Of a stretch of DNA of 64,000 nt, positions 2,489 to 45,724 are shown piece after piece. This DNA is from Isurus oxyrinchus (lineage: Eukaryota): contig JANJGN010000189.1 in the NCBI GenBank assembly GCA_026770705.1, positions 434,001-498,000 of the forward strand, in the 5' to 3' direction. The stretch's first letter is position 1, and each line of letters begins with the position of its first letter. Under the pieces are notes generated by a model. The model was not told the origin of the DNA. It ran no database searches and was given only the letters and a program-made list of their open reading frames with translations. A program made the position numbers and the translations under genes.

Positions 2489-2737
2489 GGTAAACAGAAC
2501 GTGCTGATTACTGAGCCCCGGAACACAACCAGAGACACAACTAGCGAGGGGGAGACCCCAGCTCCCCGGGGTCTCTCTGAAGGTCCAGTGGGAGGCGATG
2601 CTGGACATGGGAACCCCGACAAACCAGACGAGCTTTTCTACGCCAACATCAACTTTTCAAAGCTGCCCAGCAGTGACAGGACTGTGCACAGGAGCGAGGA
2701 CACGGAATACACACAGATCAGGTTCCAGAAAAACTGA
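2489..2737 (+). CDS. Siglec-like gene 1: terminal cytoplasmic exon with ITIM (LFYANI, 2633-2650) and ITSM-like motif (TEYTQI, 2702-2719)
   Basis: Polypyrimidine + tag acceptor, phase 0, ends TGA; proximal ITIM plus distal TxYxxI is the tail layout of CD33-related Siglecs. Confidence 0.9.
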   Translation, partial: GKQNVLITEPRNTTRDTTSEGETPAPRGLSEGPVGGDAGHGNPDKPDELFYANINFSKLPSSDRTVHRSEDTEYTQIRFQKN

Positions 2738-4670: not shown

Positions 4671-5914
4671 CAGGGAGTCCCTGCACACCCAATCTGGAGT
4701 CACTGGGTTCAGTTCTGAGTCCAGCAGCTTAGGAAGGATATATTGTCCTTGGAGGGGGTGCTGTGCAGTGTCACCAGGATGATCCCGGAGCTGAAAGGGT
4801 TAAATCCCGAGGACAGGTTGCACAGACCAGGCTTGTGTTCCCTCGAGTCTCGAAGATTAAGGGGTGATCTAATCGAGGGGTTTAAGATGAGCCGTCTCTG
4901 TGACCTGCTTCAACCCTGTTGGTCAGCAATGACAACATGAGTTGATGTTAGCCTGATATGTAGTGCATGGAGGGATATTACTCTCCAGGGTGTGTGTGCA
5001 TCACAGTGCTCATTCACATGTGTTCCATGTGCACCTACATCAGCTGTGTAGACATACAAGCCTCAATGCTGCATCCGGGGAATGTACCATGTCTCACACC
5101 TTAGCTGCAGCACGACCCTTCCCTTGGAGCTCTGTGTGCTCGAGACATATTTTGTTATTTTTTCCTGCCGTCTCTGTGTCCCCCGACCCGGGAGTGAAAA
5201 TCCGGCCTTAACTTCCACTTTCTAGTGTCTGAGACAAGAGGCAATGAGTGAGTGGGCTGACGGTCAGGATTAATGCTGTTAATCTGTGTTTGAGGGGCTG
5301 TGAATTCTCGGGGGACTAGTTACTCTCTGAGCAGCAGCTTCCAAATCCTTATTTGATGCCGCGCATGTGGGGTTGGAAGATTTTTTTTAAAACCACAGGC
5401 AGTTCACAGAAACCCACAGGAAACCCACAGAGAGACAGTCACTGAGAAAGTCACTCACTCCTTGTGGTTTCACCTTTTAACCACATCCTGTCTGTGTGGC
5501 TTAAATGTTAAACACACCGGCCACACTCAGGGAGGTTTCACTCTGTGANNNNNNNNNNNNNNNNNNNNNNNNNNNNNNNNNNNNNNNNNNNNNNNNNNNN
5601 NNNNNNNNNNNNNNNNNNNNNNNNNNNNNNNNNNNNNNNNNNNNNNNNNNNNNNNNNNNNNNNNNNNNNNNNNNNNNNNNNNNNNNNNNNNNNNNNNNNN
5701 NNNNNNNNNNNNNNNNNNNNNNNNNNNNNNNNNNNNNNNNNNNNNNNNNNNNNNNNNNNNNNNNNNNNNATACACACGATCACACACTTACAGACAGACA
5801 CAAACACACACATTCACACACACACACACATTCACTCACACACACACATTCACTCACACACTCACTCACACACACAAACACACACACAAAGACAATATCC
5901 CAATGACAACAAAC

Positions 5915-8103
5915 TGTGATTAAGAGCTTCCTACAACTTAACTAAGAGACCAAAGACATATTGAACTGTCTAAAAGCGACCTGTTTTTCAAAGAAATACA
6001 AGATTGTACACAGATCAAAAATGGCTGACACAAGTCACCTGATTGCTGATACTGTGAAGTTGATCACTTCTCTGGAAAGGTTCAAATGAATTGCACTGCA
6101 GACCTGTTGCATGGAAGTTCACGCCTGGGATGTGTCAGGGTCCACTTCAAATAGAGACACTCTTAAAAGGAAGGCATTAAAATGTAAAGTGCTGGACTTT
6201 GATCAGCTGTAGTTCAATCAAAACATTGGGAACTGCTCACCAAGCGGATAATCATCAACCATTCAAAACCCCCTGTGGAGGATACAATACCCCCGTCTCC
6301 TGTTGATTTATATCTTGAAATGCATCAAAGGTTTCAGAGATGCAAAGATAAAAAAATGGGAATACTTGGTCTATAACAATGAATGCAAAACATGCTGATC
6401 GAATTGACTTCAGGGATATACAGACAGGAGTTTAACAAATGGTTCTGCCAAGCAGATATAAGAGAAAGGAGGGGAAAAAGAAATATGGCAGTCTTCCACA
6501 AACACTGCTGGAAAAGAGCAGAAATGATTTCTCCCTCTCTCTCTCTCTGTCTGAAGCTAACAGAATGTCTTCAACAATGTGCAAGTCTGAGCCAGATAAA
6601 ATACAGGAATCTACAGAAAACCAACTAATTTAAAACAGCTTCAAACTTCACAGCCTACGCTGTAGTACAAGCAAACGACTCTTTTAATTTTTTATTGGAC
6701 TCCATAATTATNNNNNNNNNNNNNNNNNNNNNNNNNNNNNNNNNNNNNNNNNNNNNNNNNNNNNNNNNNNNNNNNNNNNNNNNNNNNNNNNNNNNNNNNN
6801 NNNNNNNNNNNNNNNNNNNNNNNNNNNNNNNNNNNNNNNNNNNNNNNNNNNNNNNNNNNNNNNNNNNNNNNNNNNNNNNNNNNNNNNNNNNNNNNNNNNN
6901 NNNNNNNNNNNNNNNNNNNNNNNNNNNNNNNNNNNNNNNNNNNNNNNNNNNNNNNNNNNNNNNNNNNNNNNNNNNNNNNNNNNNNNNNNNNNNNNNNNNN
7001 NNNNNNNNNNNNNNNNNNATTATTTTTCCTCCAGTTAGGTAACTAATAAACTTACTCTTTCTTTGACTCCACCAAACGTGGTTTAATTGGTTCATTCTTA
7101 ACAATCAAAGAGACTTGCTTTGGAAATTGCATTTGGGGGAAAATATATTTTAAACCCTTTTTTTCAACCAACCATAATTACCTCTTAAACATCTTAATCT
7201 CATTACTACTGAATTCAAAGCCCACATCTCAAAACATACAAGTTGGAAATTAGTTGTGACAGTTGTTTCAAGTTTCCCTCCAGGATTTGAACAGCTCAGC
7301 ATTTACCATCTGTTATGTCATAACAGAGCTTCCTTCAACTTAACCAACGAGCCAAAAACGTATTGAACTGTTTAAAGGAGACCTGTTTTTCAAAAGTACT
7401 AGATTAGGCATTGATCAAAAATGGCTGTCACGAGGCACCTGATTGCTGATACTGCAAACTTGATCACTTCTCTGGAAAGCTTCAAATGAATTGCACTACA
7501 GACATGTTGCATGAAAGTTCTCACTGAGATGTGTCAGGGTCCACCTGAAACAGGGGCTCCATTAAAAATGCAAAGCGCTGGACTCTGATCACTGTAGGTC
7601 TATCAAGCTAATGGGAACTGCTCACCATGCAGATATTCATCAGTCATTCAAAACCCCTTGTGGAGGATGAAATGCCTTCATCTCCTGTTGATTTATATCT
7701 TGAAATGCATCAAATGTTTCAGAGATGCAAAGATCAAAAAAGGGATTACTTGGTCTGCGACAATGAATGCAAGACATGCTGATCGAATTCCCTTTGGGAA
7801 TATACAGACAGGAGTTTAACAACAGGTTCTGTCAAGCAGATATAAGAGAAAGTAGGAGGAAAAAGAAAGATGGCAGTCACTCAAAAACACTGCTGGAAAA
7901 GAGCAGAAATTCTCTCTCTCTCTCTCTCTCTTTCTGAAGTTAACAGCGCATCTTCAACAAAGTGCAAATCTGAATCAAATCACCACCAGGATGCCACAGG
8001 AAACCAATTAACCTTGAACAGCTGCAAACGTCAATAATCTACACCTCAAAGACAAGCAATTGTATTAATCATATATTCTTTTAAATTTTTATTGGACTCC
8101 ATC
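5915..8103 (+). mobile_element. Two adjacent or nested copies of an LTR-like element (5915-7325 and 7326 to >8103)
   Basis: About 780 bp at 5925-6710 is repeated in diverged form at 7326-8103; first copy has TG...cataaCA ends; both are interrupted by N gaps. Confidence 0.55.
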
Positions 8104-8861
8104 NNNNNNNNNNNNNNNNNNNNNNNNNNNNNNNNNNNNNNNNNNNNNNNNNNNNNNNNNNNNNNNNNNNNNNNNNNNNNNNNNNNNNNNNNNNNNNNNN
8201 NNNNNNNNNNNNNNNNNNNNNNNNNNNNNNNNNNNNNNNNNNNNNGTGAGTGTGTGTCTGTCTATGTACCCTTGTGAGTGAGTGTGTGTGTGTGTGTGTA
8301 CATGTGTGCATGTGGATTGTTGCATCTTTATTATTAACGTTATTTAAAAATAGTGATCACACAAGCCTGGTTTCTAAGGAAATGAAACTGCAAACAATTT
8401 ACAGTAAAGTGAAACGTACAGGAATAATCTATTTATTTTGAGCTGATGATATATAATTATACATGAGGCATGTTGCTAATTTCAAATGTCATCTGAAATA
8501 TGGCAGGTCTGACAGAGCAGCATTCCCTCAGTGCCCACCCTCTGACAGTGCAGCACTCCCTCAGCATTGACCCTTTGAGAGTGCAGCACTCCTTCAGTAT
8601 TGACCCTCTGGAAGTGCAGCACTCCCTCAGCACTGACCCTCTGGGAGTGCAGCTCTCCCTCAGTACCGACCCTCTGGAAGTGCAGCACTCCCTCAGTGCT
8701 AACCCTCCAACAGTGCAGCACTCTCTCAGTCCTGACCCTCTGACAGTGCAGCACTCCCTCAGTACTGACCCTCCAACAGTGCAGCACTCCCTCACTGGGA
8801 AGAGTCCGTCCGCATTTTAAGCTGAAACCTTGAGACGGTCTCAAAATCCCAACCTTCCATC

Positions 8862-9509: not shown

Positions 9510-9819
9510 NNNNNNNNNNNNNNNNNNNNNNNNNNNNNNNNNNNNNNNNNNNNNNNNNNNNNNNNNNNNNNNNNNNNNNNNNNNNNNNNNNNNNNNNNNN
9601 NNNNNNNNNNNNNNNNNNNNNNNNNNNNNNNNNNNNNNNNNNNNNNNNNNNNNNNNNNNNNNNNNNNNNNNNNNNNNNNNNNNNNNNNNNNNNNNNNNNN
9701 NNNNNNNNNNNNNNNNNNNNNNNNGTTCACAGTTACACACGTTGCTAGGGACCACTTTTCCGCCTCTCTGTCAGACTGTGTGTATCTGACAGCAGGTCAG
9801 GCAGAAATAGTCCAGAATG

Positions 9820-13040: not shown

Positions 13041-13074
13041 TTGATGTTCAGTTCCCTCCCTTGTTGCCTTTCAG

Positions 13075-13365
13075 GAGTGACGTCAGAGGGATGGTCTATG
13101 AAGGCGCTGCCTCAGAGGGCCATCAGCAGCTCTTGTGTGGTTATTCCGTGTAGCTTTGACTTTCCTTCCCACTCTTACACAGCACTGCACGGAGCTTGGT
13201 ATAAATATTGGTATAGATGGAAATATACCGTCACATACACCAAAGATCCCAATTATGGGGTGGCCACATTCGTGGGACGTGCTAAAATAATCGGCGACTT
13301 GGAAGGGAAGAATTGTTCGGTGAGGATTCACAGTCTCAGAGCTGAAGACAGTGACGTGTATTACA
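13075..13365 (+). pseudogene. Siglec V-set exon truncated after ...EDSDVYY; the F-strand Arg and G strand are lost
   Basis: Siglec Cys pattern (SCVVIPC ... NCSV), HGAWY, GDL; the sequence switches to retroelement gag at ~13363 and stops at 13376; no downstream C2 or TM exons seen on the plus strand. Confidence 0.88.
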
Positions 13366-14430
13366 CCCAATTCTAAATCTTTTCACCAATTAGTCGTCCT
13401 CATGAAGATGTGTTTTCAGCTGAAGCCGTGGGTAATAATGAAAAGGTTTAAGTTTAACTCCAGAGTAAGGGCCCCGGGAGAGTCCATCGCAACCTATACA
13501 GTGAAGTGGAAGCAGGTGACTGAGCACTGGGACCTCGGAGACACACTCAATGACATGTTGCGGGGCCGATTGGTTTGTGTCGTTCACCCCAACGCCATTC
13601 AGAGCCGTTTACTCGCAGAAGCCGACATGGATTTGAAGCGCACCATGGAAATAGCGCCAGGCATGGAAAGTGCTGGGAGAGACTGGCGGGATTTACAGGA
13701 TGTACAACATGGCACCAGTCCTCAGGTGGGACAGGAACCAACCACCGGGCGTGAGGCTCAAACTGGAGAGAGAGAGAGAGAGAGAGAGAGACAGCCGCCA
13801 AGCGAGAGACAGTCTCTGCCGCTCCAGAAACTAAAAGGCTTCGTGGGAGTATTTCAGCAGCAACTCCAAAGTTGGCCTGTTCTCGATGTGGGGGGCATTG
13901 AGCACGTACTGGACACCTGCAGGTTCAAGGGGGCAGAATGCCATCACTGCCACAAGAAAGGGGTGGGTAATAAAGCAATGCAGGGTGAAATCGAGACAGC
14001 CCATCAGGCAGTGCACCAACATGATGGAAGTGAATAATATCACAGAGCCTGAAGCTGCTGATACCGATGTCTATTCCCTGTCCAATGTCACAGTGGTAAA
14101 AACTGAACCTATAACCATCACAACCCAAGTGAATGGGCAGCCACTAGTAATGGGGCAGATACGGGAGCCTCAGACACAGTGGTGGAAGAGCCCACATTTA
14201 AACAGCTAAATGAAGGAAACCAGACGCTGAATTTAGAGCCAACAATTGATCAGCTGAAGACACACACTGGAGAATCCATACAGGGAAAGGACCTCATCCC
14301 AGTACCTGTGTCCTACAGGCAGCAGACAGCCCAGCTTCCAGTGATCATAGCGACAGGTGAGGGCCCTAGTCTTCTGGGCCGAGACTGGTTCCAGAAAACC
14401 AAGCTCAGCTGCTCTGAAATGTTTCACTGG
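13363..14430 (+). mobile_element. Ty3/Gypsy gag-protease remnant, 5'-truncated and frameshifted
   Basis: gag-like RFKFNSRVRAPGESIATY...LNDMLRGRLVC, zinc knuckle CHHCHKKG, protease DTGAS (14158) and SLLGRDW. Confidence 0.85.
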
Positions 14431-14734
14431 AGGAGTTGCTGAGTTGCTGGGGGAATATGAGAGTGTATCTCGGAATGAGTTTGAAGAATTGAAGCATCCT
14501 CACAGGCTGCAAGTGTCCCTCAGGTCAGAGTTGGTTCCACTGGAAAATCCTGAAGAGAAAGAAAGCGAATTCTGTGCCGCTCTGAGCAAACTGAAGAAAC
14601 AGTTGGCAGGGAAGACCCAACCATGTCCAATGTTCCAGGAGGAAGGCAAGAGATACAAGGAAGAGACTGAAGAGCTGAAGATTCAGCTGAATGAAACCAA
14701 AGAGGCAGTTACAGTATCACAACAATTTTACAGA

Positions 14735-15230
14735 GCAGAAGGAGGCCATTCAGCCCCTTGAGCCTGTTACACAGGAACAGGAGGAGGCCATTCAGCCCCC
14801 TCAAGCCTGTTACACAGGAACAGGAGGAGGCCATTCAGCCCCTCGAGCCTGTTACACAGGAACAGGAAGAGGCCCATTCAGCCCCCTCGAGACTGTTACA
14901 CAGGAACAGGAAGAGGCCCATTCAGCCCCTCGAGCCTGTTACACAGGAACCAGAAGAGGCCCATTCAGCCCCCTCGAGACTGTTACACAGGAACCAGAAG
15001 AGGCCCATTCAGCCCCCTCGAGACTGTTACACAGGAACAGGAGGAGGCCATTCAGCCCCCTCAAGACTGTTACACAGAAACAGGAGGAGGCCATTCTGCC
15101 ACTTATGTCCGTTACACAGGAACAAGAGGAGGCCATTCTGCCACTTATGTCCGTTATACAGGAACAGGAGGAGGCCATTCAGCCACTGAAGCCCATTACA
15201 CAGGAACAGGAGGAGGCCATTCAGCCCCTT
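14735..15230 (+). repeat. ~42-bp minisatellite (caggaacaggaggaggccattcagcccctcgagcctgttaca), resembling a CR1/SINE tail
   Basis: Tandem units giving the QEQEEAIQPLEPVT repeat ORF; inverse-orientation array at 52450-53160. Confidence 0.85.
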
Positions 15231-15924
15231 GTAGGGTGTGGTGGTGTGTGTCAGCTTCACCTGCGACTTCTGAGCCGTCTGAATCACTCCCACTCCCTGG
15301 GTTCTAGACCTTGGACTTATTCGGGGCTTGTCACAAAGTGCAGCAGACAACTGGTTTTGGTGCAAGACAAAAACTGAGTTTATTGAAGTCACAAATGAAC
15401 TTCTAACATTAGGATGACACTGAGATTATACAGACTTACAAAGTACACTGAGTTAAGAATGGGGAACACACGGCATAACGAGGGAGAATCACGCTACTAA
15501 TGCCCTTACCCTTGTCCCACCCCCAAACCCTAACTAAATTGCACTAGGAGAGGTCAGGGGTCACGCTCACCAACCCAGGGTTCCTTGACAGTTGGAAATT
15601 TTGAGAACCCTTCAAGAGATGGGGAGGGTTACAGGGGCTGGAGGAGGTTACAGAGATAGGGAGGGTTGTAGGGGCTGGAGGAGGTTACAGAGATAGGGAG
15701 GGTTACAGGGGCTGGAGGAGGTTACAGAGATAAGGAGTGTTGTAGGGGCTGGAGGAGGTTACAAAATGTAAATCAGTTCCCCCTCGAGGCCCCTTGTCCA
15801 AAATAAAAGCAACGCACACAATTTGTAAAATAGTAAGTGTAGCAATGAGAGGAGTAAGGGGTTAGGGGGCGTGCGGTTCACCTGATTTGCCGACATAAGA
15901 ACCAGCCCCTATGTTTTTGCTATG

Positions 15925-16142
15925 TTGTGTTGCGTCAATATGAACACATATTTGCACAAGGTGAAGGGCGTTGCGGAGGGACTGATAGTTCTCGGCGCCA
16001 GACAGTCAATGTCCCAGTGACATTACTGCTGGTCCCAGGCCAGTGGGACAGGGAACATCGACACTGCAATATCCAGAAATGGGTGTGATACCACACAGCT
16101 ACCCGCCCCCGGCTGTCCCCTTCAAGTGTTTCAGGTATAAGA
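15925..16142 (+). promoter_or_regulatory. Hepcidin proximal promoter
   Basis: TATAA at 16136; GC box at 16102; GGCGCC (BMP-responsive element core) at 15994 directly followed by AGAC (Smad-binding element); C/EBP-like TTGCACAA at 15952 and TTGCGTCA at 15930. Confidence 0.7.
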
Positions 16143-16212
16143 GCAGGAAGCTCCTCTAGTTACAAACCAAAGCATCAAAGCAGAGCCAGAAGATCAGAAG
16201 AGACAGGCAGAG

Positions 16213-16305
16213 ATGGGAAGCTCCCAGATGAAATGGCGACTTGTCTTGTTCACTCTGACTTTGCTGCTCTCCCTGCAGCTGAGTCACTTCTTCTCCTTGT
16301 CGAGG
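16213..16305 (+). CDS. HAMP: Hepcidin exon 1 (signal peptide), MGSSQMKWRLVLFTLTLLLSLQLSHFFSLSR; alternative start at 16228
   Basis: Hydrophobic signal peptide downstream of a TATA box; AGG|gtaagc donor, phase 0. Confidence 0.88.
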
Positions 16306-16504
16306 GTAAGCTAAGAGATGTCCCTCTGGGTGAGGTGTTTCTTGCACATGACTCTACGTCTACCACCCAGATAGACTGGTCACTTCCGCAGTTTGATATT
16401 ATTATGTTCGTGCCTTTAATATTGTCGCCCTCTATGAATTTAACATCATTTCCTTCTGTCATTTCCCCTGAAATTCTCATTCTTGTTTTCAATCCCTCCT
16501 CAGC

Positions 16505-17470
16505 GACTCCCTATCTCTGTAACCTCCTCCAGCCCGTACAACCCTCCCTATCTCTGTAACCTCCTCCTGCCCCTACACCCCTCCCTATCTCTGTAACCTC
16601 CTCCAGCCACTACAACCCTCCCTATATCTGTAACCTCCTCCAGCCCCTACAACCCTCCCTATATCTGTAACTTCCTCCAGCCCCTACAACTGTCCCTATC
16701 TCTGTTACCTCCTCCAGCCCCTACAACACTCCCTATCTCCGTAACCTCCTCCAGCCCCTACAACCCTCCCTATCTCTGTAACCTCCTCCAGCCCCTATAA
16801 ACCTCCCTATCTCTGTAACCTCCTCCAGCCCCTACAACCCTACCTATCTCTGTAACCTCCCCCAGGCCCCACAACCCTCATGATCACTGTAACCTCCTCT
16901 AGACCCTACAACCCTCCCTATCTCTGTAACCTGCTCCAGACCCTACAACCCTCCCTATCTCTGTAACCTCCTCCAGACCCTACAACCCTCCCTATCTCTG
17001 TAACCTCCTCCAGGCCCCACGACCCTCAGAATCACTGTCACCTCCTCCAGCCCCTACAATGCTCATGAACCCTATAACGTCCTCTCCACACTATAACTCT
17101 CCCTATTTCTGTAACCTACTGTGGCCCCTACAACAGTATCTATTTTGGTAACCTCCTCCAGCCTCTACAACCCTCCCTACCTCTGTAACCTCCTCCAGCC
17201 CCCACAACCCCCCCATCTCTTTAACCTCCTACAGCCCCTACTCACCTCCCTATCTCTGTAACCTCCTACAGCCCCTACAACCCTCCCTATCTCTGTAACC
17301 TCCTACAGCCTCTAGAACCCTCCCTATCTCTGTAACCTCCTACAGCCTCTACAACCCTCCCTATCTCTGTAACTTCCTACAGCCCTTACAACCCTCCCTT
17401 TCTCTGTAACCTCCTACAGCCTCTACAGCCCTCCCTATCTCTGTAACCTCCTCCAGCCCCCACAACCCTA
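16505..17470 (+). repeat. 37-bp minisatellite (ctccctatctctgtaacctcctccagcccctacaacc) in HAMP intron 1
   Basis: Roughly 25 tandem units; opposite-orientation arrays at 15615-15765 and 37575-37880. Confidence 0.9.
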
Positions 17471-17479
17471 CCTAAATCA

Positions 17480-18090
17480 CTGGTCTGAGTCTCACTCCAG
17501 GGAATTCAGTCCCATAATGTAGATCAACGCTCCGTGCTGAGGGAGTGCTGCACTCTCAGAGGGTCAGTAGTGTGGAAGTGTTGCACTATTGGAGGGACAG
17601 TACTGAGGGAGTGCTATACTGTCAGAGGTCAGTACTGAGGGAGTGGTGCTGTGTCGAAGGGTTAGTACTGAAATAGAGCTGCACTGACGGAGGGACAGTA
17701 CTGAGAGAGCGCAGCACTATCGAAGGGTTAATACTAAGGGAGTGCTGCAGTGTCAAAGGGTTAGTACTGAGGGAGCACAACAATGTTGAATGAGACATTA
17801 AACTGAGTCCCCCGTCTGCCCTCTCGGGAGGGTGTGAAAGATCCCACAGCCACTATTTGGAGGAAGAGCAGGGGGGAGATCTCCCCGGTGTCCTGGGACC
17901 AATATTTATCCCTTACCCAACATCACCAAAAACAGATTATCTAGGCCATGATCACATTGCTATTTGTGGGATCTTGCTGTGCACAAATCAGCTGCCACAT
18001 TTCCTACAGTGTGAGTGCACTTCAAAAACATCCTTCAGTGGCTGTGAAATGCTTTGGGATGTGGTGAAAGGCGTTAGAGAAATGCAAGTC
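17480..18090 (+). mobile_element. DeuSINE/SacSINE1-like SINE with internal 33-bp expansion
   Basis: Core gagacattaaactgag...aagatccca...gaagagcaggg...aatatttatccc...gaaatgcaagtc; similar copies at 19945-20555 (+) and 10195-10455 (-). Confidence 0.7.
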
Positions 18091-18190
18091 TGTCCTCCTC
18101 CCACTCTCTCTCCTGTACCTCTCTCTCTCTCTCTCCCTCTCCCTCAATCCTCCTCTCACTTTCTCCCTGATAAATTCTTTCTTTTTGCAG

Positions 18191-18247
18191 GTTGACACTG
18201 CTTTAGGTTCTTCGACGATTGAGAAATCTGTGGATTCCCCGGACACG
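18191..18247 (+). CDS. HAMP: Hepcidin exon 2 (prodomain), VDTALGSSTIEKSVDSPDT
   Basis: Long polypyrimidine tract + gcag acceptor, ACG|gtaggt donor; 57 nt, phase 0-0; size similar to exon 2 of other vertebrate hepcidins. Confidence 0.82.
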
Positions 18248-19519
18248 GTAGGTGGAAATTCATTCCTTATTTTAAGGTTTCTCCCTGCTCGTTTCTTCCA
18301 CAGAAAGTTTTCTGATTTCAAGCTGATTTCAGTGGCAGTCTGTCTCGGTTATACTCAGGAGGCATGTTTGAAATCGAGCCCCCCCCAACTTTTTTTGCAA
18401 AGCTGGGAAGAGACAATTCCAAGGAAGTGAACATATCCCCACAGGAATTTTAAATGTAACCCACGCTGGGAATAGTGAGAGGGAGACTGATCCAGCCTGG
18501 GAGTGGGTTAAAGAGAGGCTGGGAGTCGAGAGTCGGAGAGAGGGATGGAATGGGGGAGGGAGGGATTGGAAGAGAGAGACAGAGAGTGGGACGGGGAGGG
18601 GTGAAAGGGAAAGAACATAGGTGGGAGAGAGTGACAGAGGGAGAAATTAAAGAAGAGATGCAGAGTGAGGGAAAGTGAAAAAGGAAGAGAGATTGTCCAA
18701 GAGAGAGAAATTAACAGGAAAGGGAGAGTTACAGAGTGAGCGAAAGGTACAAAAATAGTGTGAGAGAGAGGGAGAGATACAGAGTGGGAGAATGAGACAG
18801 GGGAGAGAGAGAGGGGGAGAGACAGGAAAAGGGAGAGAGGAGAGAAAGATTGGGAGAGAGGGCAATTGAGAGGAAGAGTAGGAGAGAGAGAGACAGGGAG
18901 AGGAGGAGTGGATGAGAGGAAGAGAGAGAGAGATATGGAGCAGGAGAACACCTCCTCCGGTCCCGATGTTCCTCCAAAATCTCTGAAATTCCTGCATCTC
19001 CCGGGTCCCCCTGATTCCCATCGCTCCACCATTGGTGGCCGTGCCTTCAGCTGCCTGGGGCCCTGAGCTCCGGAATACCCTCCCTTAACCTCTCTGCCTC
19101 TCTCTCTCTCTCTCCTTTAAGACGCTCCTTAAAAACTGACATCTTTGACCAAGCTTTTGGTCACCTATCCCTAATATCTCCATATGTGACTCAGTGTTAG
19201 ACTTCTCTCTGATTTACGCTCCGGTAATGTGGGCTGGGACATTTTGCAATGTCAGAGGCGCTGTGTAAATGCAAGTTGTGAGTGTTATGTGGAAGGGAGA
19301 CCCCAGGCGGCAGTCAGTGCCAGAGACTGGAGTCATTGTGCGCAGACCATATCTAATCTCTCCGAATGCACAATCGGTTTGACTGTCAGCCAAAGCACTT
19401 TTGATATTTGATCCTTCTAACTGTTTATAACCAGGCCTACATCATACACCGTGAGGCTGGTTAATCAACAGACACCTTAGAGGATCGAGTGAAAGACAAA
19501 GAGGACTTGCATTTCTCTA

Positions 19520-19668
19520 TAAAAACAAAGAAAACTGCGGATGCTGGAAATCCAAAACAAAAACAGAATTACCTGAAAAAACTCAGCAGGTCTGGCAGCA
19601 TCGGCAGAGAAGAAAAGAGTTGACGTTTCGAGTCCTCAGAAGGGTCATGAGGACTCGAAACGTCAACT
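19520..19668. mobile_element. Young Penelope-like fragment with inverted end and 14-bp target-site duplication
   Basis: TSD cttgcatttctcta at 19506-19519 and 19669-19682; perfect 24-bp inverted repeat at 19615-19638 / 19648-19671. Confidence 0.7.
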
Positions 19669-20644
19669 CTTGCATTTCTCTAGCGCCTTCCAACACATCA
19701 GGACGTCCCAAACTGTTTCGCAGACAATCAAGTGCTTTTTTTCTTTCATGTGAGGTCACTGATGTACTGTGGGAAAAGAATCAGCCATTGGCGCACTGTA
19801 AGATCCCACAGACAGCAGCATGATAATGACCAGCGCGCTCCCAGTACTTGCACTGCAAGTGTCAGTTCAGGGTGTGTGCTCGATTCTCTGCAACTCTCAG
19901 CTCTGAGTTAAAAGGACCACCAGGCGTAATTGAGAAATTACCGAGCTGTCGGAGGGTCAGTACCGGCGGGGGGGCAGGACAGTCGGAGGGTCAGTACTGA
20001 GGGGGTGCTGCATTGTCAGACGGTCAGTCTTGGAGTGCTGCACTGTCAGAGGGTCAGTCCCGGCGGGGGACTGCACAGTCGGAGGGTCAGTACTGAGGGG
20101 GTGCTGCATTGTCAGACGGTCAGTACTGAGGGAGTGCTGCACAGTCGGAGGGTCAGTACTGAGGGGGTGCTGCACTGTTGAAGGCGCTGTCTTTCAGATG
20201 AGATGTTAAACTGAGACAACATCTGCCCTCTCAGATGGATGTAGAGGATTCCATGGCCACAATTTAGATGAAGTGCGTCAGGAGTTGGGGGGTATGTGTG
20301 GAGGGGATGGTGGGGGGTGGATGGGGTGGAGTTATGTCCACTTTCCTGGGGCAAACATTTATCCCTCAACTGACATTGGTAAAAAACTGAAAATCGGGGC
20401 CATTATCACATTTCTGTTTGTGGGATCTTGCTGTGCGTGAATTGCCTGCTGCGTTTCCTACATTACAGCGGTGAGCTCACTTCAGAAAAAGTCCTTCCTT
20501 CAGCTGTGGAACACTTTGGGCCATCCTGAGGAGGGGAAAGGCGCTATAGAAATGCGCCATCCTCCTTCCAATGACGCGCCTGATTGAAATGATGCCTTCT
20601 TTCTTTCCGGAATGTTCTCACCTATTGTCCTCCTGCTTTTCCAG

Positions 20645-20761
20645 GGCTCCTTGCTGCAGCGCCAGAAGAGAATGGGCAGACAGCAGCTCTGCAGATTCTG
20701 CTGTAACTGCTGTAATTGGAGAGAACCAAATGAGACTTGTGGTCTCTGCTGTAGATATTAG
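20645..20761 (+). CDS. HAMP: Hepcidin exon 3: GSLLQRQKR / mature MGRQQLCRFCCNCCNWREPNETCGLCCRY-stop
   Basis: ttttccag acceptor; furin site RQKR; 8-Cys pattern C-x2-CC-x-CC-xn-CG-x-CC diagnostic of hepcidin; 88-aa (or 83-aa) prepropeptide; AATAAA at 21653. Confidence 0.95.
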   Translation, partial: GSLLQRQKRMGRQQLCRFCCNCCNWREPNETCGLCCRY

Positions 20762-23299
20762 ACCCTGGCCTCATTCACGCAAGGTCATCCTGCACCATGC
20801 CACAGCCTCTCCCCTCCTTATCTACTGCTTAGCAATCTATTTCACACAGGCCCTGTTCATTAATTCCAACTGAAACTTTACCTGCGTTTTACAGCAGGGA
20901 AAGAAGCCATTCGGCCCATCTGTTCCATGCTGGAGTTTCTGCTCCACACGAGTCTCCGCCCACCCCTTCTCCATCTCACCCCATCACCATATCCTTCTAT
21001 TCATTTCTCCCTCGTGTGTTTATCCAGCTTCCCCTAAAATACATAGACACTATTCACCTCACGTGACTGTGTTTGTGTCTGTCTTTATGAGCGTGCGTGT
21101 GTGACTGTCAATATGTGTGTGTCAATGTGAATGTGTGTGATTGTGTCAGCGTGTATGTGTGTATGTGTGACTGTCAGTGCGTGTCAATGTGAATGTGTGT
21201 GATTGTGTCAGCGTGTGTGTGTGTGTGTATGTGTGTGTGTGACTGTGTCAGTGTGTGTCAATGTGAATGAGTGAGTGTGTCAGTGTGTCTGTGTGCGTGT
21301 GTGTGACTGTGTCAGTGTGTGTCAATGTGAATGAGTGAGTGTGTCAGTGTGTCTGTGTGGGTGTGTGTGACTGTCACTGTGTGTCAATGTGAATGAGTGA
21401 GTGTGTCAGTGTGTCTGTGTGGGTGTGGGTGTGTGAGTGTGCAAGTGAATGTGTGAGAAATCTTATGACTAAGTCATTTGAATGGATGTTACTGGGGTTA
21501 ATGATAATTAAAATACAGAGAGATGTAAAGCGGGCTCCTGATTTTGCTGCTTTATGCTCCCGGGCACAGATTCACCCCGACAATGTGTTCATGATTCACC
21601 ATTATCTTGTCGGGACTTTAATTGTAAAGATTATGATTTGTGAAAAAAAATGAATAAACAACTTTTGTCTTCACAAAGAGTCTGGCTTGGTATTTCAGGC
21701 TACTTGTCTCCCCCTCACCCTCCCCCCCCCACCATGCCCCCCACACCAGGGAACAATTGTCCCCCCTTCCTCTGAAGTTCTGGGTAAAGATCAGCTTTGT
21801 TCAATGCAAACTGTTCCGACATCGAGAACGTTGTTACAAATATCACACAAAGGGCACACGCCATGATAGCCCACTTTCAACAGATTTTACCAGTTGACCA
21901 GGTTGAAAACCTTTTCATAAACCACAACGTAGGTGTTCAATTCTTGCTGCTGTTTGCTTAATGTTCTCATAACTGCTATAACCTCTCTAGTTCCACTACA
22001 TAACAACACCAACATAAATAAACAGAAGCAGGAGTAGGCCTTTTGGCCCCCCAAGCCAGCTTGTCCATTCAATTTGAACCTGGCTCCTGCTGAAAGTTAT
22101 TTAAGTTGAAGCGATAAAGCCATCAGGTGCAGGGATTAAAATGTAAGCAAAGGAAAAATAATACTTAGACATGAGATTTAAAATCAGTTTCTGTGAAGAA
22201 TCATACTGAGGCCATTGCTCTGGATTCCTTCTTTCCAGAGTGAAGGGTTTAAAACTAGGAGTCACATTCAGCAGCTGCGTTGTCTTCTCTAGTTGACTAT
22301 TTGGAGGTTGCCTGTAGATGTGAATCAGCAGGTCAGCAGCTTTGGGGAGTGAGTGAAGGTCCCTTTTATTTACAGGATCTGCCACAGGATGTGCAGGAAT
22401 ATTCCTGCTGAATCCCCCATCCTTGCATTCATGAAGGGGTTGAGACTGGAAGTCATATTCAGCAGCTACAATGGCCTTTGTAGTCAACTGTCTGGAGGTT
22501 GCCTGTACAGGTGGACTCAGCATGTCAACACTTTTGTTGGGTGGGGGGACACGGGTAGTGAAGGTCCCCTTTCTTTAAAGGCTCTGCCAGTGCAAAACTT
22601 GATGATCCTGGGTCAAAATCATGTATCACCCTCCCCAACAGCACTGTGGATGTGCCCTATGGAGGGTCCTTGGCTTCGACAAGCAGCCTACCAGCTCTGC
22701 TCTCAATTCCTCTTCGCACTTGCTTCCTTCCTCCTCTGGTCTTTACTTTGTTATAGTGTTAGTGTCCGCTCTGCCTTTTTTGTTGCTTTCCCAATTCTTC
22801 CCACCAACTCTCTCTGGCTTGATCCTGCTCTGTGCTCATCTCATTGGTTTGAGTTTCTATCCGTTCATTGACCTGGTGTAATCTGAAACTGGTGCAATCA
22901 GGTAGGGGTGGGGGGGTTGGCGCTGGCCGTGGGTGGTGATACACGGCTACCTTTTTACCAAAATTCTTTCACGGGATGTGGACAGCATTTGTTACCTGTT
23001 TCTGACTGACCCCTGGAGAAGGGGGTGCTGAGCTGCCTTTTCGAAGTGCTGCAGTTCGCCTGGTTTGACTGGTCTGTGGCGGGTTTTGATATAACTCAGT
23101 GGCTTGCTCGGCCATTTCAGGGGCCAGTTAAGAGTCAACCACATTGCTGTGGGTCAGGAGTCACACGTAGGCCAGAATGGGTAAGGACGGCAGGTTTCCT
23201 TCCCCAAAGGGCATTAGTGACCCAGATGGGTTTTTGCAACAATTGGCCTTAGTTTCATGGTCACCATTACTGAGACTAGCTTCGCATTCCAGATGTCAC

Positions 23300-25775: not shown

Positions 25776-28226
25776 TCAGATATCCATATGTTCTCAAAGG
25801 CAATTGGGGATGGGCAACAAATACTGGCCTAGTCAGCGACACCAACATCCCTGAAATGAATAAGAAAAAAATGTATCAATCAATTAAATTTATTGATTAA
25901 TCGAATTGAAATTCCTCCAGCTGCCGTGGTGGGATTTGAACCCGTGCCTTCAAAGTATTCACCTGGGCCTCTGGATCACTGGCCTAGTGCCATTCCCATT
26001 GTGCGACTGTCTGCTATCATCATGGCTCTTTCACATCGATGTGGAAGTCCTGATAACAGAAGCATTGGACGAGGTACAGAAAGGTGACAAATCAGGAGCT
26101 CCATTGCTCAATATGAACGGATAATAAAGATAAATGAACATAAACCTTCCAGTCGCTAATTAGGGAGTCACTGTGGAGCCCATGAGTCCCTCGCAGCGCT
26201 ATTGCAACCTTCTGGATCCCCAGTAGGGGACTCGGGGTGCTGCTGTGTCTTCCTCATCATTTGGAAAAGCCGGAATTGTTCGGGTGCCCCTTCAAACAGG
26301 CCGAAGATGCAGTGGGTGATGTCTCCCACAGGCCCTGGGAGACCTCCCCTGCCAATTTGTTTTGTAGCTTATTCTTCAACTGCGACATTGGATCAGCTTG
26401 AAAAAGGGTGGGTCTGAGGCAATACCACCAGGTAAGCGTCTATCCCCTCACACGTCACCCCCCCCCACCCCCGTAACCATCACAGTCCCTCCCATCGTGC
26501 TGGAGGAGCATAATGTGCACATTCCCCTCCTTCCAATCAGTCTCCTCCCTTCCTCTCTAATCCTTGATCTTATTGTGTTGGGGGTTGACATCCCAGTCCT
26601 CCTCCCTAGACTGTCTGATGTTGACATCCCAATGCCCCATGTAGACCTGACCTCTCTCCAACTAGAGGCCCATTGTACTGTGACTTACAGAGACCAACGG
26701 CCCCCCTCGATTCCCACCCCCACCCCTACTCTCTATATTACCTGCTCCCCACTGACAGGCTGCAGATGCCTCCTCTGACTGGGATTGTGCCACCTGTGGC
26801 CTAGTATCAAGCCACCCACCCCCAGGATGGACGTGTGTGAGGGACTGACCACGTCCTGCACACCATGCTGGGCACCACCAACCCAGGACTGCCAGGCTGT
26901 CCCCACCACACTGGACTGGGACTAGAATAGGCGTGCCAAGCACAGCTCTCTAAATCGTGGCGCAGACCCACAGCACTCGCAATGTTTTGTGGCCCGAATC
27001 CTTGCTGAGGAACTGCCCAGCACTAAAAGCAAAAAAACTGCGGATGCTGGAAATTCAAAACAGAAACAGAAACAGAAATACCTGGAAAAACTCAGCAGGT
27101 CTGGCAGCATCGGCGGAGAAGTACTGAGGTAGTGCGGCACTGTCGGAGGTTCAGTACTGAGGGAGTGCTGCACTGTCGGAGGGTCTGAGCTGAGGGAGTG
27201 CTGCACTGTCGGAGGCTCTGAACTGAGGGAGAGCTGCACTGTTGGAGGGTTTGAACTGAGGGAGTGCTGCACTGTCGGATGGTTTGAACTGAGGGAGTGC
27301 TGCACTGTCGGAGGGTCTGAACTGAAGGAGTGCTGCACTGTCGGAGGCCTGAACTGAGGGAGTGCTGCACTGTCGGAGGGTCTGAAATGAGGGAGGGCTG
27401 CACTGTCGGAGGGTCTGAACTGAGAGAGTGCTGCACTGTCGGAGGTTCTGAACTGAGGGAGTGCTGTACTGTCTGAGGGTTTGAACTGAGGGAGTGCTGC
27501 AAAGTCGGAGGGTCTGAACTGAGGGAGTGCTGCACTGTCGGAGGGTTTGAACTGAGGGAGTGCTGCATTGTCGGAGGGTCTGATCTGAGGGAGTGCTGCA
27601 CTGTAGGAGGGTCTGAACTGAGGGAGTGCAGCACTGTTGGAGGGTCAGTACTGAGGGAGTGCTCCGCTGTCTAAAGAACATTGTACAAATTGCACAAAAT
27701 TGTATCTGATGCCTGTGTCTCATGCTAACATGAAGTTCATGCACACAACAGGAATATTTCTCGCTGTTTCTCGACAGCAAGACAGCTTTGATATCACACC
27801 AGCCACTGGCAAGTGTGTGCAGCTACAATGTGACATGTTTACATTGGAAATTTCTATTATAAAGATGGACAGAGGAATTCATCTGATTGGAAAACGTGAC
27901 AACATGAAGTAATGTCTTTGAGCCAAGAATTTTGCAGCAAAATAAGAATTTTAATCTTTAAATATCTACAGAACAGGCTGAGCATTTTAATCACTTGAGT
28001 TAATCAATGTAATTTTATTCATAAGCCAAATGCTTCTTACAATCTATCGCAGCATGAAAAAGGTGCAGCATTCAGAAAGCACATTCCAATCAGAGAACAG
28101 AGTTTAGCAACGTCACATTTCTGTTCATTCCTATTCGACCATATTGGCTGCACACAGCCAGACAATGCCGTGGTTATGATGTGTCCACACAGCAGGACTG
28201 GGGAGCACCAGGTATAAGGAAAAGTT

Positions 28227-34022: not shown

Positions 34023-34975
34023 GGTTCAAAGTGACAGAGCAGCTCATGTTTTGAGATGTTGGTGAACTGTTAACCCTTTGTGTCCTGACCCTGTGTTGAT
34101 ATTTCTGCTCACAGGTGCACAGTCATTGACCAGGAGTTTCTCCTGTGGGTCAGTGGGTTTCACACCCGAACTCAGGGAGTCAGTATGTTTTAGAATTTTG
34201 TGGGGTTCAAGACCCCATTCAGCAGATGCCTGCCCCACAGAGTAGACTGAAATTCCCCAGTGTCAGTACTGAGGGAGTGCTGCACTGTCAGTGGGTCAGT
34301 ACTGAGGGAGTGCTACACTGTCAGAGGAACAGTACTGAGGGAGTGCAGCACTGTCGGAGGGTCAGTACTGAGGGAGTGCTACACTGTCAGAGGGACAGTA
34401 CTGAGGGAGTGCTGCACTGTCAGAGGGACAGTATCGAGGGAGTGCTAATCTGTCGGAGAGACAGTTTTGAGGGAGTGTTGCATTGTCAGAGGGACAGTAC
34501 TGAGGAATTGTTGCGCTGTTGGAGCGTCAGTACTGATGGAGTGCTGCACTGTCGGTGGGACAGTCCTCAGGGAGTGCCGCACTGTCGGAGGGTCAGTACT
34601 GAGGGAATGTTGTACTGTTGGAGGTTCAGTACTGAAAGTGCGCTGCACTGTCGGAGGGTCAGTACTGAGGGAGTGTTGTACTGTCAGAGGTTCAGTATTG
34701 AGTGAGTGCTGCACTGTCAGAGGGTCAGTACTGAGGGAGTGCTGCACTGTCAGGGGGTGAGTACATTGAGATTCCTGCTCTGCTCTATCAGCCCCTTGGC
34801 TGGACATAAAAGCCGCTGTGTTAATGTTCAGAAACGGTTATTAATTGTATTCTGGTCACCATTTTCCCTCAAAGACAGATTATCTGATTGTCATCAGAAT
34901 ACCTTTCTATGGGATCCTGCTGAGCGTAATCTTGACTGTTCCAGCGAATGTATAATGAAGGGTGTCCGTTCTTAC

Positions 34976-35272
34976 CTTGCACAGTTAGTATGAGGGTCTG
35001 CTCCGATGAAACAGATGGATATCTCACTCTGCAGCAGAGAGTGTGTCCGTGGTGTTTGAGTGATGGGATCAGGGTCAGAACAGAAGTATAGGTCAGAGTG
35101 ACACCATGCTGAGTTACAGTGTTTGAGACTGATCCAGGTACGTCAGTGGGAATGTCCCAGGATAAGACAGGTGCTGCTGTTCCATTGCACGTTGTGTCGA
35201 AGGTGCAGCTTACATCCACAGGCTTTCCTGCAATAATTTCAGCAGGGAATATCGTGGGTTTATCTGTGAAAT
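34976..35272 (-). pseudogene. Unit B: C2-set (type a) exon; no TM exon follows in this unit
   Basis: 297 nt, canonical splice sites, several substitutions (e.g. LCCRV). Confidence 0.85.
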
Positions 35273-39372: not shown

Positions 39373-40679
39373 AAAGGAGTGAGTAAACAGGCATTAGGAA
39401 TGAGTGCGTAATTTCACAATGCGTTACAACAGAATCAAACTGTTGGCAATTCATCATGACTCTGTGATCTTTCTGTTTGCTGTTTGTTAACTTCAAATTT
39501 CTACCATGTCTCTGAGGGTTTATATTTAAAAATGCTGTTGGAGGATAAATACTAAGCATGTTCTGCACTGTCGGAGGGTCAGTATTGTTGGAGTGCTACC
39601 CTGTTAGAGGGTCAGTACTGAGGCAGTGCTGCACTGTTGGCGCGTCAGTATTGAGGTATGCTGCACTGATGGAGGATAAGCAGCGAGGGAGTGCTGCTCT
39701 GTTTGAGGGACAGCTCTGAGGGAGTTCTGCACTGTCAGAGTGTTGGCACTGAGGGAGTGCTGCACTGTCGGCCGGTCAGAACTGAGGGAGTGCTGCAGTG
39801 TTGGAGGGTCTGAACTGAGGGAGTGCTGCACTGTTGGAAGGTATAAACTGAGGGATTGCTGCACTGTAGGAGGGTCTAAACTGACGGAGTGCTGCACTGT
39901 CGGAGGGTCTGAACTGAGGGAGTGCTGCACTGTCGGAGGGTCTAAACTGAGGGAGTGCTGCACTGTCTAAAATACATTGCACAAATTGCCCAAAATTGCA
40001 TCTGATGCCTGTGTCTGATGCACACATGAAGTTCATGCATTTATCAGGAATATTTCTCTCTCTTTGTGAGCAGCAAGACAGCTTTGATATCACACCACCC
40101 ACTGGCAATTGTGTGCAGCTGCAATGTGACGTGTTTACATTGAAAATTTCCATTATAAAGATGGGCACAGGAATTCATCTGACTGGAAAAAGTAACAACA
40201 TGAAGTAATGTCTTTGAGCCAAGAATCTGGAAGCAAAATAAGAATTTTCATCCATAAGTATCTACAGAACAGGCTGAGCATTTTAATCACTTGTGTTAAT
40301 CAATGTAATTTTATTCATAACCCAAATGCTTCTTACAATCTATCGCAGCATGAAAAAGGTGCAGCATTCAGAAAGCTCATTCCAATCAAAGAACAGAGTT
40401 TAGCAACGTCACATTTCTGTTCATTCCTATTCGCCCATGTTGGCTGCACACAGCCAGATAATGCCGTGGTTATGATGTGTCCACACAGCAGGACTGGGGA
40501 GCACCAGGTATAAGGAAAAGTTTCAGCTTGCTGAGGAGAAGAAGGACAATCTCTCGTTCCAGGTTTCTCTCCGTACATTAAGAAGCAGGCATGCCGATGT
40601 TTCATTGCACTCTGTCTGCTGATGGGAGTCCGCTTGGAAATTGCTGTTTGTGCTGATGGAAAGAATAAGCTTTTCATAA

Positions 40680-45506: not shown

Positions 45507-45724
45507 CTGGGGAGAGAAATATCAATATTTAAATCTTGATAATTTGTAGATCCACTAGACTCGATATCCACCCCCTCCATCACTGGGGCACAGCGGCTGC
45601 AGTGTGGACCATCTACAGGACACACAAGGAACTCCACAAGGTATCACAATGGTTAGAAGAGAATCCTGGACACAGGAGTTGACAAGATCATTCTACATTG
45701 GCTGATGGTCCTCAGGACCCTGTT

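What the first reader, a model, noticed from the sequence alone, without database searches (positions are those of the whole stretch)
16213..20761. Hidden three-exon hepcidin gene with an atypical mature peptide (long loop, N-glycan sequon, no His-containing N-terminus)
Seen: three short exons, not assembled by the ORF track, splice in phase 0/0 into signal peptide + prodomain + RQKR + MGRQQLCRFCCNCCNWREPNETCGLCCRY. Established: hepcidins have this gene structure and 8-Cys pattern. Human [25 protein letters not shown] has a 4-residue Cys5-Cys6 loop and an N-terminal (D/Q)(T/S)H(F/L) segment needed for ferroportin regulation. Here the loop has 8 residues (NWREPNET) including an N-E-T sequon, and the N-terminus is MGRQQL. 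Inference: a divergent, possibly antimicrobial or neofunctionalised hepcidin paralog (analogous to teleost HAMP2), potentially glycosylated.
Basis: partly seen in the sequence, partly recalled or inferred. Interest (0 to 1): 0.9.

Follow-up and report, generated by a model that had tools for sequence, protein, structure and literature searches.

The report
Intact hepcidin gene, unusual mature peptide
This is a real-looking, intact three-exon hepcidin gene sitting among Siglec immune-receptor genes; its 29-residue peptide has a doubled hairpin loop and lacks the N-terminal motif that lets other hepcidins control iron export, but the same odd form appears to be the common one in this genome and I found no proof that it is expressed.

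Summary
Exons 16213-16305, 18191-18247 and 20645-20761 have consensus GT/AG borders, all in phase 0. They encode a hydrophobic leader, a pro-segment, RQKR and a 29-aa, 8-Cys peptide. Exon 3 alone passes Pfam's Hepcidin threshold (31.6 bits against 27). A TATA box and good Kozak context precede the ATG. The flanking genes are Siglec (CD22-like V-set) genes, as at the human HAMP-MAG-CD22 locus.

The atypical features are real: an 8-residue Cys5-Cys6 loop, an N-E-T sequon, and MGRQQL in place of the (Q/D)(S/T)H(L/F) start.

The "lone divergent paralog" reading is only partly supported. Unchecked scan notes report the same 29-aa form in many other copies in this genome, some with broken exon 1. 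So this is one unit of an amplified hepcidin-Siglec family. The scan found this before on other DNA.

The window's only GGCGCC (the BMP-response motif of human HAMP) lies 142 nt upstream of the TATA box, hinting at retained iron/BMP control.

Splicing and expression could not be shown: the laid runs covered only intronic repeats. Function stays open: about 0.5 host-defence or other role, 0.3 iron hormone, 0.15 silent duplicate. Interest is moderate.

The parts
15994..16003 (+). GGCGCCAGAC: BMP-response-element-like GC-rich Smad site with an adjacent AGAC Smad-binding element. It lies 142 nt upstream of the TATA box.
   Evidence: It is the only GGCGCC in the 64-kb window (1.96 expected per window from shuffles). 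The motif is identical to BRE1/BRE2 of the human hepcidin promoter (PMC3879105, PMC3203580). Function is inferred, not tested.
16136..16141 (+). TATA box (TATAAG), 77 nt upstream of the ATG
   Evidence: It is the only TATAA[AG] between 15800 and 16300. No upstream ATG lies between it and 16213.
16213..16305 (+). Exon 1 coding part: 31 codons with the start codon (G at -3, G at +4) and the signal-peptide-like leader
   Evidence: The hydrophobic core LVLFTLTLLL has Kyte-Doolittle 2.7. The donor is AGG|GTAAGC.
16306..18190 (+). Intron 1 (1885 nt), mostly minisatellites: 37-nt unit x26 at 16507-17474 and 33-nt unit at 17537-17776
   Evidence: Very high contig depth shows these are high-copy repeats.
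18191..18247 (+). Exon 2: 19 codons of the pro-segment (VDTALGSSTIEKSVDSPDT)
   Evidence: It has a strong polypyrimidine acceptor and the donor ACG|GTAGGT.
18248..20644 (+). Intron 2 (2397 nt), with GA-rich low complexity and a 33-nt minisatellite at 19946-20178
20645..20671 (+). Exon 3, end of the pro-segment (GSLLQRQKR); the RQKR convertase site is at 20660-20671
   Evidence: R-X-K-R is the furin-type consensus (established knowledge).
20672..20761 (+). Mature 29-aa, 8-Cys peptide plus TAG. The loop NWREPNET is at 20714-20737 and the N-E-T sequon at 20729-20737.
   Evidence: Pfam Hepcidin 31.6 bits, above the cutoff of 27; bass hepcidin 1S6W; pI 8.2, charge +1.4
21038..21043 (+). Candidate weak poly(A) signal AATACA, 277 nt after the stop. 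The next signals are ATTAAA at 21507 and AATAAA at 21653, beyond a TG-rich repeat.
   Evidence: The 3' end is not determined.

Best explanation
This is a genuine, structurally intact hepcidin-family gene (P about 0.9). It is one copy of a lineage-specific amplified family that lies interleaved with Siglec genes at the locus that corresponds to HAMP-MAG-CD22. Shown by sequence: TATA box, good start context, a hydrophobic leader in exon 1, a pro-segment in exons 2-3, an RQKR convertase site and an 8-Cys C-terminal peptide, all joined by consensus phase-0 splice sites. Inferred mechanism: the 88-residue precursor enters the ER and the leader is removed. A furin-type convertase then cuts after RQKR and releases a 29-aa, mildly cationic peptide. 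The peptide folds into the four-disulfide hepcidin hairpin, whose tip is enlarged by 4 residues and may carry an N-glycan at N20. It lacks the (Q/D)(S/T)H(L/F) N-terminal motif tied to ferroportin regulation. Its core (CRFCCNCC...PN..CG.CCR) is closest to the bass type-2 hepcidin. According to unchecked scan notes it is multi-copy. My best guess is therefore that it acts as a host-defence or immune peptide, like teleost type-2 hepcidins, and not as the ferroportin-degrading iron hormone (P about 0.5 for this functional part).
For: Gene model. Family: Pfam Hepcidin above its gathering score on exon 3 alone. The only PDB sequence hit is bass hepcidin 1S6W, and no human hepcidin chain reached E 10. 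The pattern is unique in the window. Locus: flanking exons hit V-set and the CD22-like first Ig domain, and C2-set. N-terminus: MGRQQL, against sea bass Hamp1 QSHLSL and Hamp2 HSSPGG (sequences in PMC5665920). Type 1 is defined by Q-S/I-H-L/I-S/A-L, and types lacking it are diverse and antimicrobial (PMC8502971). Hamp2 does not regulate ferroportin (PMC5665920). Multi-copy status, with some copies broken in exon 1: first-stage notes, unchecked.
Against: There is no transcript evidence. The four runs laid gave zero depth on exon 1 and only repeat-derived contigs in the introns. The promoter carries the window's single GGCGCC, the BMP-response motif of human HAMP (PMC3879105), which fits an iron-regulated hormone better than a pure defence peptide. 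The peptide keeps six residues before Cys1, a hydrophobic residue at position 6 and Phe9, as ferroportin-active hepcidins do. No canonical copy is known in this genome, so this form might have to serve as the iron hormone. Net charge is only about +1.4, which is weak for a membrane-active peptide. No orthologs could be retrieved. Teleost type 2 arose within teleosts (my own knowledge), so any likeness is parallel and not shared descent.
Confidence: 0.5

Rival explanations
1. It is the ordinary iron-regulatory hepcidin of this lineage. The peptide binds the species' ferroportin through a lineage-specific N-terminus and the gene is driven by BMP/SMAD signalling. The extra copies are passengers of Siglec-cluster amplification.
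For: Its position next to Siglec genes matches the HAMP-MAG-CD22 block. The single GGCGCC(AGAC) of the window lies 142 nt upstream of the TATA box (PMC3879105, PMC3203580). There are six residues before Cys1, and the LCRFCC core is shared with ferroportin-active fish hepcidins (PMC5665920). Cartilaginous-fish ferroportin already has the C326 equivalent (PMC8235187). No canonical copy is recorded in the scan notes.
Against: His3 and Phe/Leu4 of the iron-regulatory motif are replaced by Arg and Gln (PMC8502971). The hairpin tip is doubled in length and carries a sequon. Dozens of copies of a dose-sensitive hormone gene would be unusual. The taxon is unverified.
Confidence: 0.3
2. It is a young, transcriptionally silent or decaying duplicate. 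The reading frame is intact only because the segmental duplication is recent.
For: No exon coverage appeared in the four runs laid. There is no canonical AATAAA or ATTAAA within 745 nt of the stop. Scan notes report sister copies with a stop or a one-base frame error in exon 1, which is birth-and-death turnover. Minisatellites fill the introns and flank the promoter.
Against: All signals are intact: TATA box, Kozak context, four consensus splice sites, the convertase site and all 8 Cys. The laid runs were picked up through repeats and are not shown to be RNA from a hepcidin-expressing tissue, so the lack of coverage says little.
Confidence: 0.15
3. It is a chance arrangement of open frames and not a gene.
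For: None beyond the missing transcript evidence.
Against: The Pfam Hepcidin match has E 2e-7 on 38 residues. The 8-Cys pattern is unique in six frames of 64 kb. It has a convertase site directly before it, and three phase-0 exons with consensus splice sites, a leader and a TATA box.
Confidence: 0.02

Closest known systems
Vertebrate hepcidin (HAMP; Pfam PF06446), type 1 / human hepcidin-25 and fish Hamp1
   Same: Both have a three-exon gene, with signal peptide, propeptide and RX(K/R)R site, and the mature peptide in the last exon. Both have 8 Cys in the C-x2-CC-x-CC-xn-C-x2-CC pattern and six residues before Cys1. Both are linked to Siglec (MAG/CD22-type) genes. Both have GGCGCC in the proximal promoter.
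   Different: The N-terminus is MGRQQL, not DTHFPI or QSHLSL: no His3 and no Phe/Leu4. The Cys5-Cys6 loop has 8 residues, against 4 in human (sequence quoted in the finding) and 5 in sea bass Hamp1 (PMC5665920). It has an N-E-T sequon and is 29 aa long, against 25-26. It is apparently present in many copies.
Teleost type-2 hepcidins (sea bass Hamp2; hybrid striped bass hepcidin, PDB 1S6W)
   Same: Both lack the iron-regulatory N-terminal motif. Both have the CRFCCNCC core, a Pro-Asn in the loop and a CG.CCR(F/Y) end (PMC5665920). Both are multi-copy families. The teleost type-2 forms are linked to host defence (PMC8502971).
   Different: Teleost type 2 has a 5-residue loop and no sequon. It arose by duplication within teleosts (my own knowledge), so this gene cannot be a member of that clade and any likeness is parallel. 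The position inside a Siglec cluster and the co-amplification with Siglec genes are not described for Hamp2.

Membership tests
Hepcidin family (Pfam PF06446) | Sequence match to the family profile above the curated threshold | tested here: met
   Exon 3 alone: 31.6 bits against a cutoff of 27, E 2e-7, profile positions 24-52 of 53
Hepcidin family (Pfam PF06446) | Eight cysteines in the pattern C-x2-CC-x-CC-xn-C-x2-CC at the C-terminus | tested here: met
   Cys at 7, 10, 11, 13, 14, 23, 26, 27 of the 29-mer. It is the only such pattern in six frames of the window.
Hepcidin family (Pfam PF06446) | Prepropeptide layout: signal peptide, pro-segment, RX(K/R)R convertase site directly before the mature peptide | tested here: met
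   A hydrophobic leader and RQKR at 20660-20671. No formal signal-peptide predictor was available, so the cleavage point (residues 24-30) is not fixed.
Hepcidin family (Pfam PF06446) | Three-exon gene with the mature peptide in exon 3 | tested here: met
   Consensus GT/AG borders, all phase 0. The splicing itself is not shown by RNA.
Hepcidin family (Pfam PF06446) | Beta-hairpin fold with four disulfides | tested here: inconclusive
   The single-sequence AlphaFold2 model was helical, with pLDDT 71 and pTM 0.38. It is unreliable for a disulfide-rich mini-protein without an alignment.
Hepcidin family (Pfam PF06446) | Conserved genomic neighbourhood (USF2-HAMP-MAG/CD22) | tested here: met
   Siglec-type V-set, Ig_CD22 and C2-set exons lie on both sides. 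USF2 is not in this window. The human gene order is from my own knowledge.
Hepcidin family (Pfam PF06446) | Expressed, spliced transcript | tested here: inconclusive
   Four runs were laid. They gave only intronic repeats, zero depth on exon 1 and no exon-exon joint. The run type and tissue are unknown.
Iron-regulatory (type 1) hepcidin | N-terminal motif Q-S/I-H-L/I-S/A-L (fish) or DTHFPI (human) | tested here: not met
   The N-terminus is MGRQQL, and only the hydrophobic residue at position 6 is kept (motif from PMC8502971, PMC5665920)
Iron-regulatory (type 1) hepcidin | BMP/SMAD-responsive promoter (GGCGCC elements) | tested here: inconclusive
   One GGCGCC at 15994, the only one in 64 kb, lies about 142 nt upstream of the TATA box. 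I estimate a chance of about 0.01 that a site at this density falls in the 300 nt upstream of the TATA box. Binding and response are not tested. No TTCnnnGAA STAT site was found in the 900 nt upstream.
Iron-regulatory (type 1) hepcidin | Binds ferroportin and causes its internalisation or occlusion | not testable with these tools
   Complex prediction accepts only session sequences or bacterial, archaeal and phage references. No ferroportin of this species was available.
Teleost type-2 (antimicrobial) hepcidin | Lacks the iron-regulatory motif; diverse, multi-copy | tested here: met
   The motif is absent. Multi-copy status is known only from unchecked scan notes.
Teleost type-2 (antimicrobial) hepcidin | Descent from the teleost-specific hamp2 duplication | not tested
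   No homologues could be retrieved for a tree. If the host is not a teleost, membership is excluded by descent.

The most novel reading that the evidence does not exclude
The 29-aa long-loop form without His3/Phe4 is the only hepcidin type in this genome, presumed to be a cartilaginous fish, and it has been amplified to dozens of copies together with Siglec genes. Under this reading there are two possibilities. Either ferroportin in this lineage is controlled through a quite different, possibly N-glycosylated, hepcidin interface. Or the ancestral hepcidin was an immune peptide and the iron-hormone role arose later, in bony vertebrates.
Probability: 0.2. Interest if true: 0.8.

Novelty: new variant of a known kind. 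Interest (0 to 1): 0.5.

Why it matters
Hepcidin is the master iron hormone of vertebrates, and its origin is unresolved. A review places the first hepcidin-compatible ferroportin (C326) in cartilaginous fish (PMC8235187). I found no paper in the searchable library that describes a cartilaginous-fish hepcidin sequence. An intact hepcidin keeps the gene layout, the genomic address and a BMP-RE-like promoter motif. Yet it has lost, or never had, the ferroportin-linked N-terminus and carries an enlarged, possibly glycosylated hairpin tip. That gives a direct handle on whether iron regulation or host defence came first. The co-amplification with Siglec receptor genes would also be an unusual mode of expansion for this family. 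Against this, a single copy of a multi-copy family without expression data is a modest finding. Routine genome annotation may already list it as "hepcidin-like".

Tried and rejected
1. RNA evidence. The look-up of sequencing runs gave only coded runs of uncertain type. I laid X5, X7, X8 and X10 because their small word shares could have been a spliced mRNA. They matched only the intronic minisatellites and interspersed repeats, with zero depth on 16000-16353. The trace depths in X5 over the exon 2 and exon 3 bins had no joint listed. This is uninformative and is not evidence of silence.

2. The search for homologous proteins with the stop-free frame 20588-20758, scoring residues 18-57: no candidate shared three 5-residue words. 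It says nothing about relatives of such a short Cys-rich peptide.

3. The search of protein representatives with exon 3: the only hit at E 0.001 or better was P0001, a 577-aa translated repeat with WREP/CC-like periodic matches, which is spurious. A 38-aa query cannot reach significance against 1.8 billion proteins unless the match is nearly identical.

4. ESM Atlas: best score 0.76 to an unnamed plant cluster, which is meaningless.

5. The AlphaFold2 single-sequence model of exon 3 was a low-confidence helical hairpin, so I did not use it or search with it.

6. A self-BLAST of promoter plus exon 1, exon 2 and exon 3 against the window found no second copy or orphan exon here.

7. Rfam on 12-24 kb: nothing.

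8. The search of earlier findings by sequence was blank.

9. The supplement of the nurse-shark plasma proteome paper holds no hepcidin sequence.

So I could not check whether the 88-aa precursor is already in a public protein set.

11. I did not try to name the organism. The tools return coded names.
Full report
**What is there**

- Exon 1 (16213-16305) encodes MGSSQMKWRLVLFTLTLLLSLQLSHFFSLSR.
- Exon 2 (18191-18247) encodes VDTALGSSTIEKSVDSPDT.
- Exon 3 (20645-20761) encodes GSLLQRQKR, then MGRQQLCRFCCNCCNWREPNETCGLCCRY, then TAG.

The splice signals are near consensus, and every junction is phase 0:
- donor 1: AGG|GTAAGC
- acceptor 1: TTCTTTCTTTTTGCAG|G
- donor 2: ACG|GTAGGT
- acceptor 2: CTCCTGCTTTTCCAG|G

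A TATAAG box lies at 16136, 77 nt before the ATG. No upstream ATG lies between them, and the start has G at -3 and +4. Exon 1 has a basic n-region and a 14-residue hydrophobic core with Kyte-Doolittle up to 2.7. That is a signal-peptide-like leader, but no formal predictor was available. All searches and the fold used single exons or a contiguous stop-free frame, by reference.

**Is it more than chance**

Exon 3 alone scores 31.6 bits against Pfam Hepcidin (PF06446), above the curated cutoff of 27, with E 2e-7. A six-frame scan of all 64 kb for the 8-Cys pattern finds this one place only. Against all PDB sequences the only hit is the hybrid striped bass hepcidin 1S6W, sharing CRFCCNCC, PN and CG.CCR(F/Y). 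Together with a convertase site directly before the peptide, three phase-0 exons and a promoter, a chance origin can be dismissed.

**The atypical features**

Mature peptide:
- 29 aa, with Cys at 7, 10, 11, 13, 14, 23, 26 and 27
- pI 8.2 and net charge about +1.4
- the Cys5-Cys6 loop is NWREPNET, 8 residues

The Pfam alignment puts 33 residues on 29 profile positions, a 4-residue insertion. The 1S6W alignment opens a 4-residue gap there. Sea bass Hamp1 (QSHLSLCRWCCNCCRGNKGCGFCCKF) and Hamp2 (HSSPGGCRFCCNCCPNMSGCGVCCRF), as printed in PMC5665920, both have 5-residue loops. The human peptide quoted in the finding has 4.

N20-E21-T22 is a formal N-glycosylation sequon. Whether it is occupied is unknown.

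The six residues before Cys1 are MGRQQL. Type-1 fish hepcidins are defined by Q-S/I-H-L/I-S/A-L (PMC8502971). Only the hydrophobic sixth position is kept. His3 is Arg and Leu/Phe4 is Gln. Hamp2, which also lacks the motif, does not regulate ferroportin (PMC5665920).

**Surroundings**

The gene lies among Siglec-type genes.
- An exon at 45049-45525 (-) hits V-set (40.5 bits) and the CD22-like first Ig domain (28.7 bits, above its cutoff of 27).
- An exon at 43066-43422 (-) hits C2-set_2.
- An exon at 13041-13373 (+) hits V-set just under its cutoff (25.5 bits against 26).
- Several V exons carry the YFFR/FFFR sialic-acid-arginine motif.

This matches the USF2-HAMP-MAG-CD22 order known from human (my own knowledge). 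It argues that this is the ancestral hepcidin address and not a retro-copy. USF2 is not in the window. No second hepcidin exon or promoter copy lies in this window.

The introns are mostly minisatellites. These, and not the exons, are what public runs shared with the stretch.

**Promoter**

GGCGCC occurs exactly once in the 64-kb window, at 15994. It is followed at once by AGAC, and lies 142 nt upstream of the TATA box (1.96 sites expected per window). Both BMP-response elements of the human hepcidin promoter are GGCGCC (PMC3879105). A GGCGCC-to-GGTGCC patient mutation in HAMP impairs the BMP response (PMC3203580).

At this density I estimate a chance of about 0.01 that a site falls within 300 nt upstream of the TATA box. 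This is suggestive, not proof. No TTCnnnGAA STAT site lies in the 900 nt upstream.

The 3' end is unclear. The only signal within about 300 nt of the stop is the weak variant AATACA at 21038. ATTAAA and AATAAA follow at 21507 and 21653, beyond a TG-rich repeat.

**Family context from the scan**

The scan's own notes are first-stage AI notes that I could not check by sequence.
- 88 notes in this genome mention hepcidin.
- Many notes, on other pieces, describe the same "29-aa, extended loop, sequon, no DTHF/QSHL" peptide.
- Further copies are noted at about -18 kb, -10 kb and +94 kb on this same piece.
- Three notes report sister copies with a stop or a one-base frame error in exon 1.
- Two notes record the same HAMP-Siglec linkage.
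- No note mentions a canonical copy, which is a weak negative.

If these notes hold, this gene is not a lone divergent paralog. It is one unit of an amplified hepcidin-Siglec family undergoing birth-and-death turnover, and the odd peptide is the norm in this genome.

**Expression**

This could not be shown. The four runs I laid gave no depth on exon 1 and no exon-exon joint. They covered only high-copy intronic repeats. Their type and tissue are unknown, so this is no evidence of silence.

Protein-database routes to orthologs also failed, for technical reasons of query length. The single-sequence structure model was unreliable.

The searchable literature holds no description of a cartilaginous-fish hepcidin sequence. 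One proteome paper detected hepcidin in nurse shark plasma from a transcriptome, and it had no annotated whale shark ortholog (PMC9207270). I could not verify that the window comes from a shark.

**Most likely mechanism**

Shown by sequence: an intact precursor with a leader, a pro-segment, RQKR and an 8-Cys C-terminal peptide.

Inferred: ER entry, leader removal, furin-type cleavage after RQKR, and secretion of a four-disulfide hairpin with an enlarged, possibly glycosylated tip.

Function is the open part.
- For a host-defence or other non-ferroportin role (about 0.5): the loss of His3 and Phe/Leu4, the type-2-like core, the multi-copy state and the immune-receptor neighbourhood.
- For the iron hormone (about 0.3): the ancestral locus, the BMP-RE-like site, the retained six-residue N-terminal arm with Leu6 and Phe9, the presence of the C326 equivalent in cartilaginous-fish ferroportin (PMC8235187), and the lack of any known canonical copy.
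- For a silent young duplicate (about 0.15).

**Verdict**

It is a hepcidin by every sequence test available, and a new variant of that known kind in its loop, sequon and N-terminus. It is probably the common form of an expanded family in this genome, and its activity is unproven. Interest is moderate (0.5). It would be high only if the long-loop form proves to be the lineage's sole hepcidin.

Noticed in passing
window 15615-15763 and 16507-17474: The same 37-nt minisatellite stands in opposite orientation on the two sides of the hepcidin promoter and exon 1. Upstream there are 4 copies of the unit AGAGATAGGGAGGGTTACAGGGGCTGGAGGAGGTTAC. In intron 1 there are 26 copies of its reverse complement. 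The result is a large inverted repeat around the transcription start. Contig depth shows it is very high-copy in the genome.
   Followed up: partly
window 17537-17776, 19946-20178; also 1571-1945, 8457-8844, 26922-27780, 34145-34993, 39604-40168: A 33-nt minisatellite (CTGAGGGAGTGCTGCACTGTCGGAGGGTCAGTA) recurs in both hepcidin introns and all over the Siglec cluster. It gives long spurious ORFs of the STEGVLHCQRV type on both strands.
   Followed up: partly
window 13041-13376 (+) and 13351-15377 (+): A plus-strand Siglec-like V-set exon lies 3 kb upstream of the hepcidin gene. It appears to lack the YFFR arginine motif (it ends ...SDVYYTQF). It runs straight into ORFs without any Pfam match and a 42-nt repeat array (15000-15230). 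It is possibly an orphan or disrupted V exon.
   Followed up: partly
window 2501-2737 (+): An ORF with tyrosine motifs of ITIM/ITSM style (LFYANI, TEYTQI), as in a Siglec cytoplasmic tail exon. It is on the plus strand, far from any plus-strand Ig exon seen here. It has no Pfam hit.
   Followed up: no
window 15930-15962: TTGCGTCAAT and TTGCACAA lie about 40-65 nt upstream of the GGCGCC site. They are C/EBP- or CREB/ATF-like half sites of the kind known in mammalian hepcidin promoters (my own knowledge). This was seen by eye only, with no statistics.
   Followed up: no
window 5549-5769, 6712-7018, 8104-8245, 9510-9724, 59443-59620, 60555-60734, 62580-62722: Seven N runs of 142-307 nt, most next to CA/TG-rich low-complexity sequence.
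   Followed up: no
window 59336-62827 (-): Three to four near-identical Ig C2-like exons (…NLTWRHLNVPMNRTSS.NELWLVIPHVTSRDTGDYQCVAENEHGAVEGF.TITVE…) are repeated about every 1-1.3 kb, each abutting an N run. This is a tandem exon duplication or an assembly artefact.
   Followed up: no
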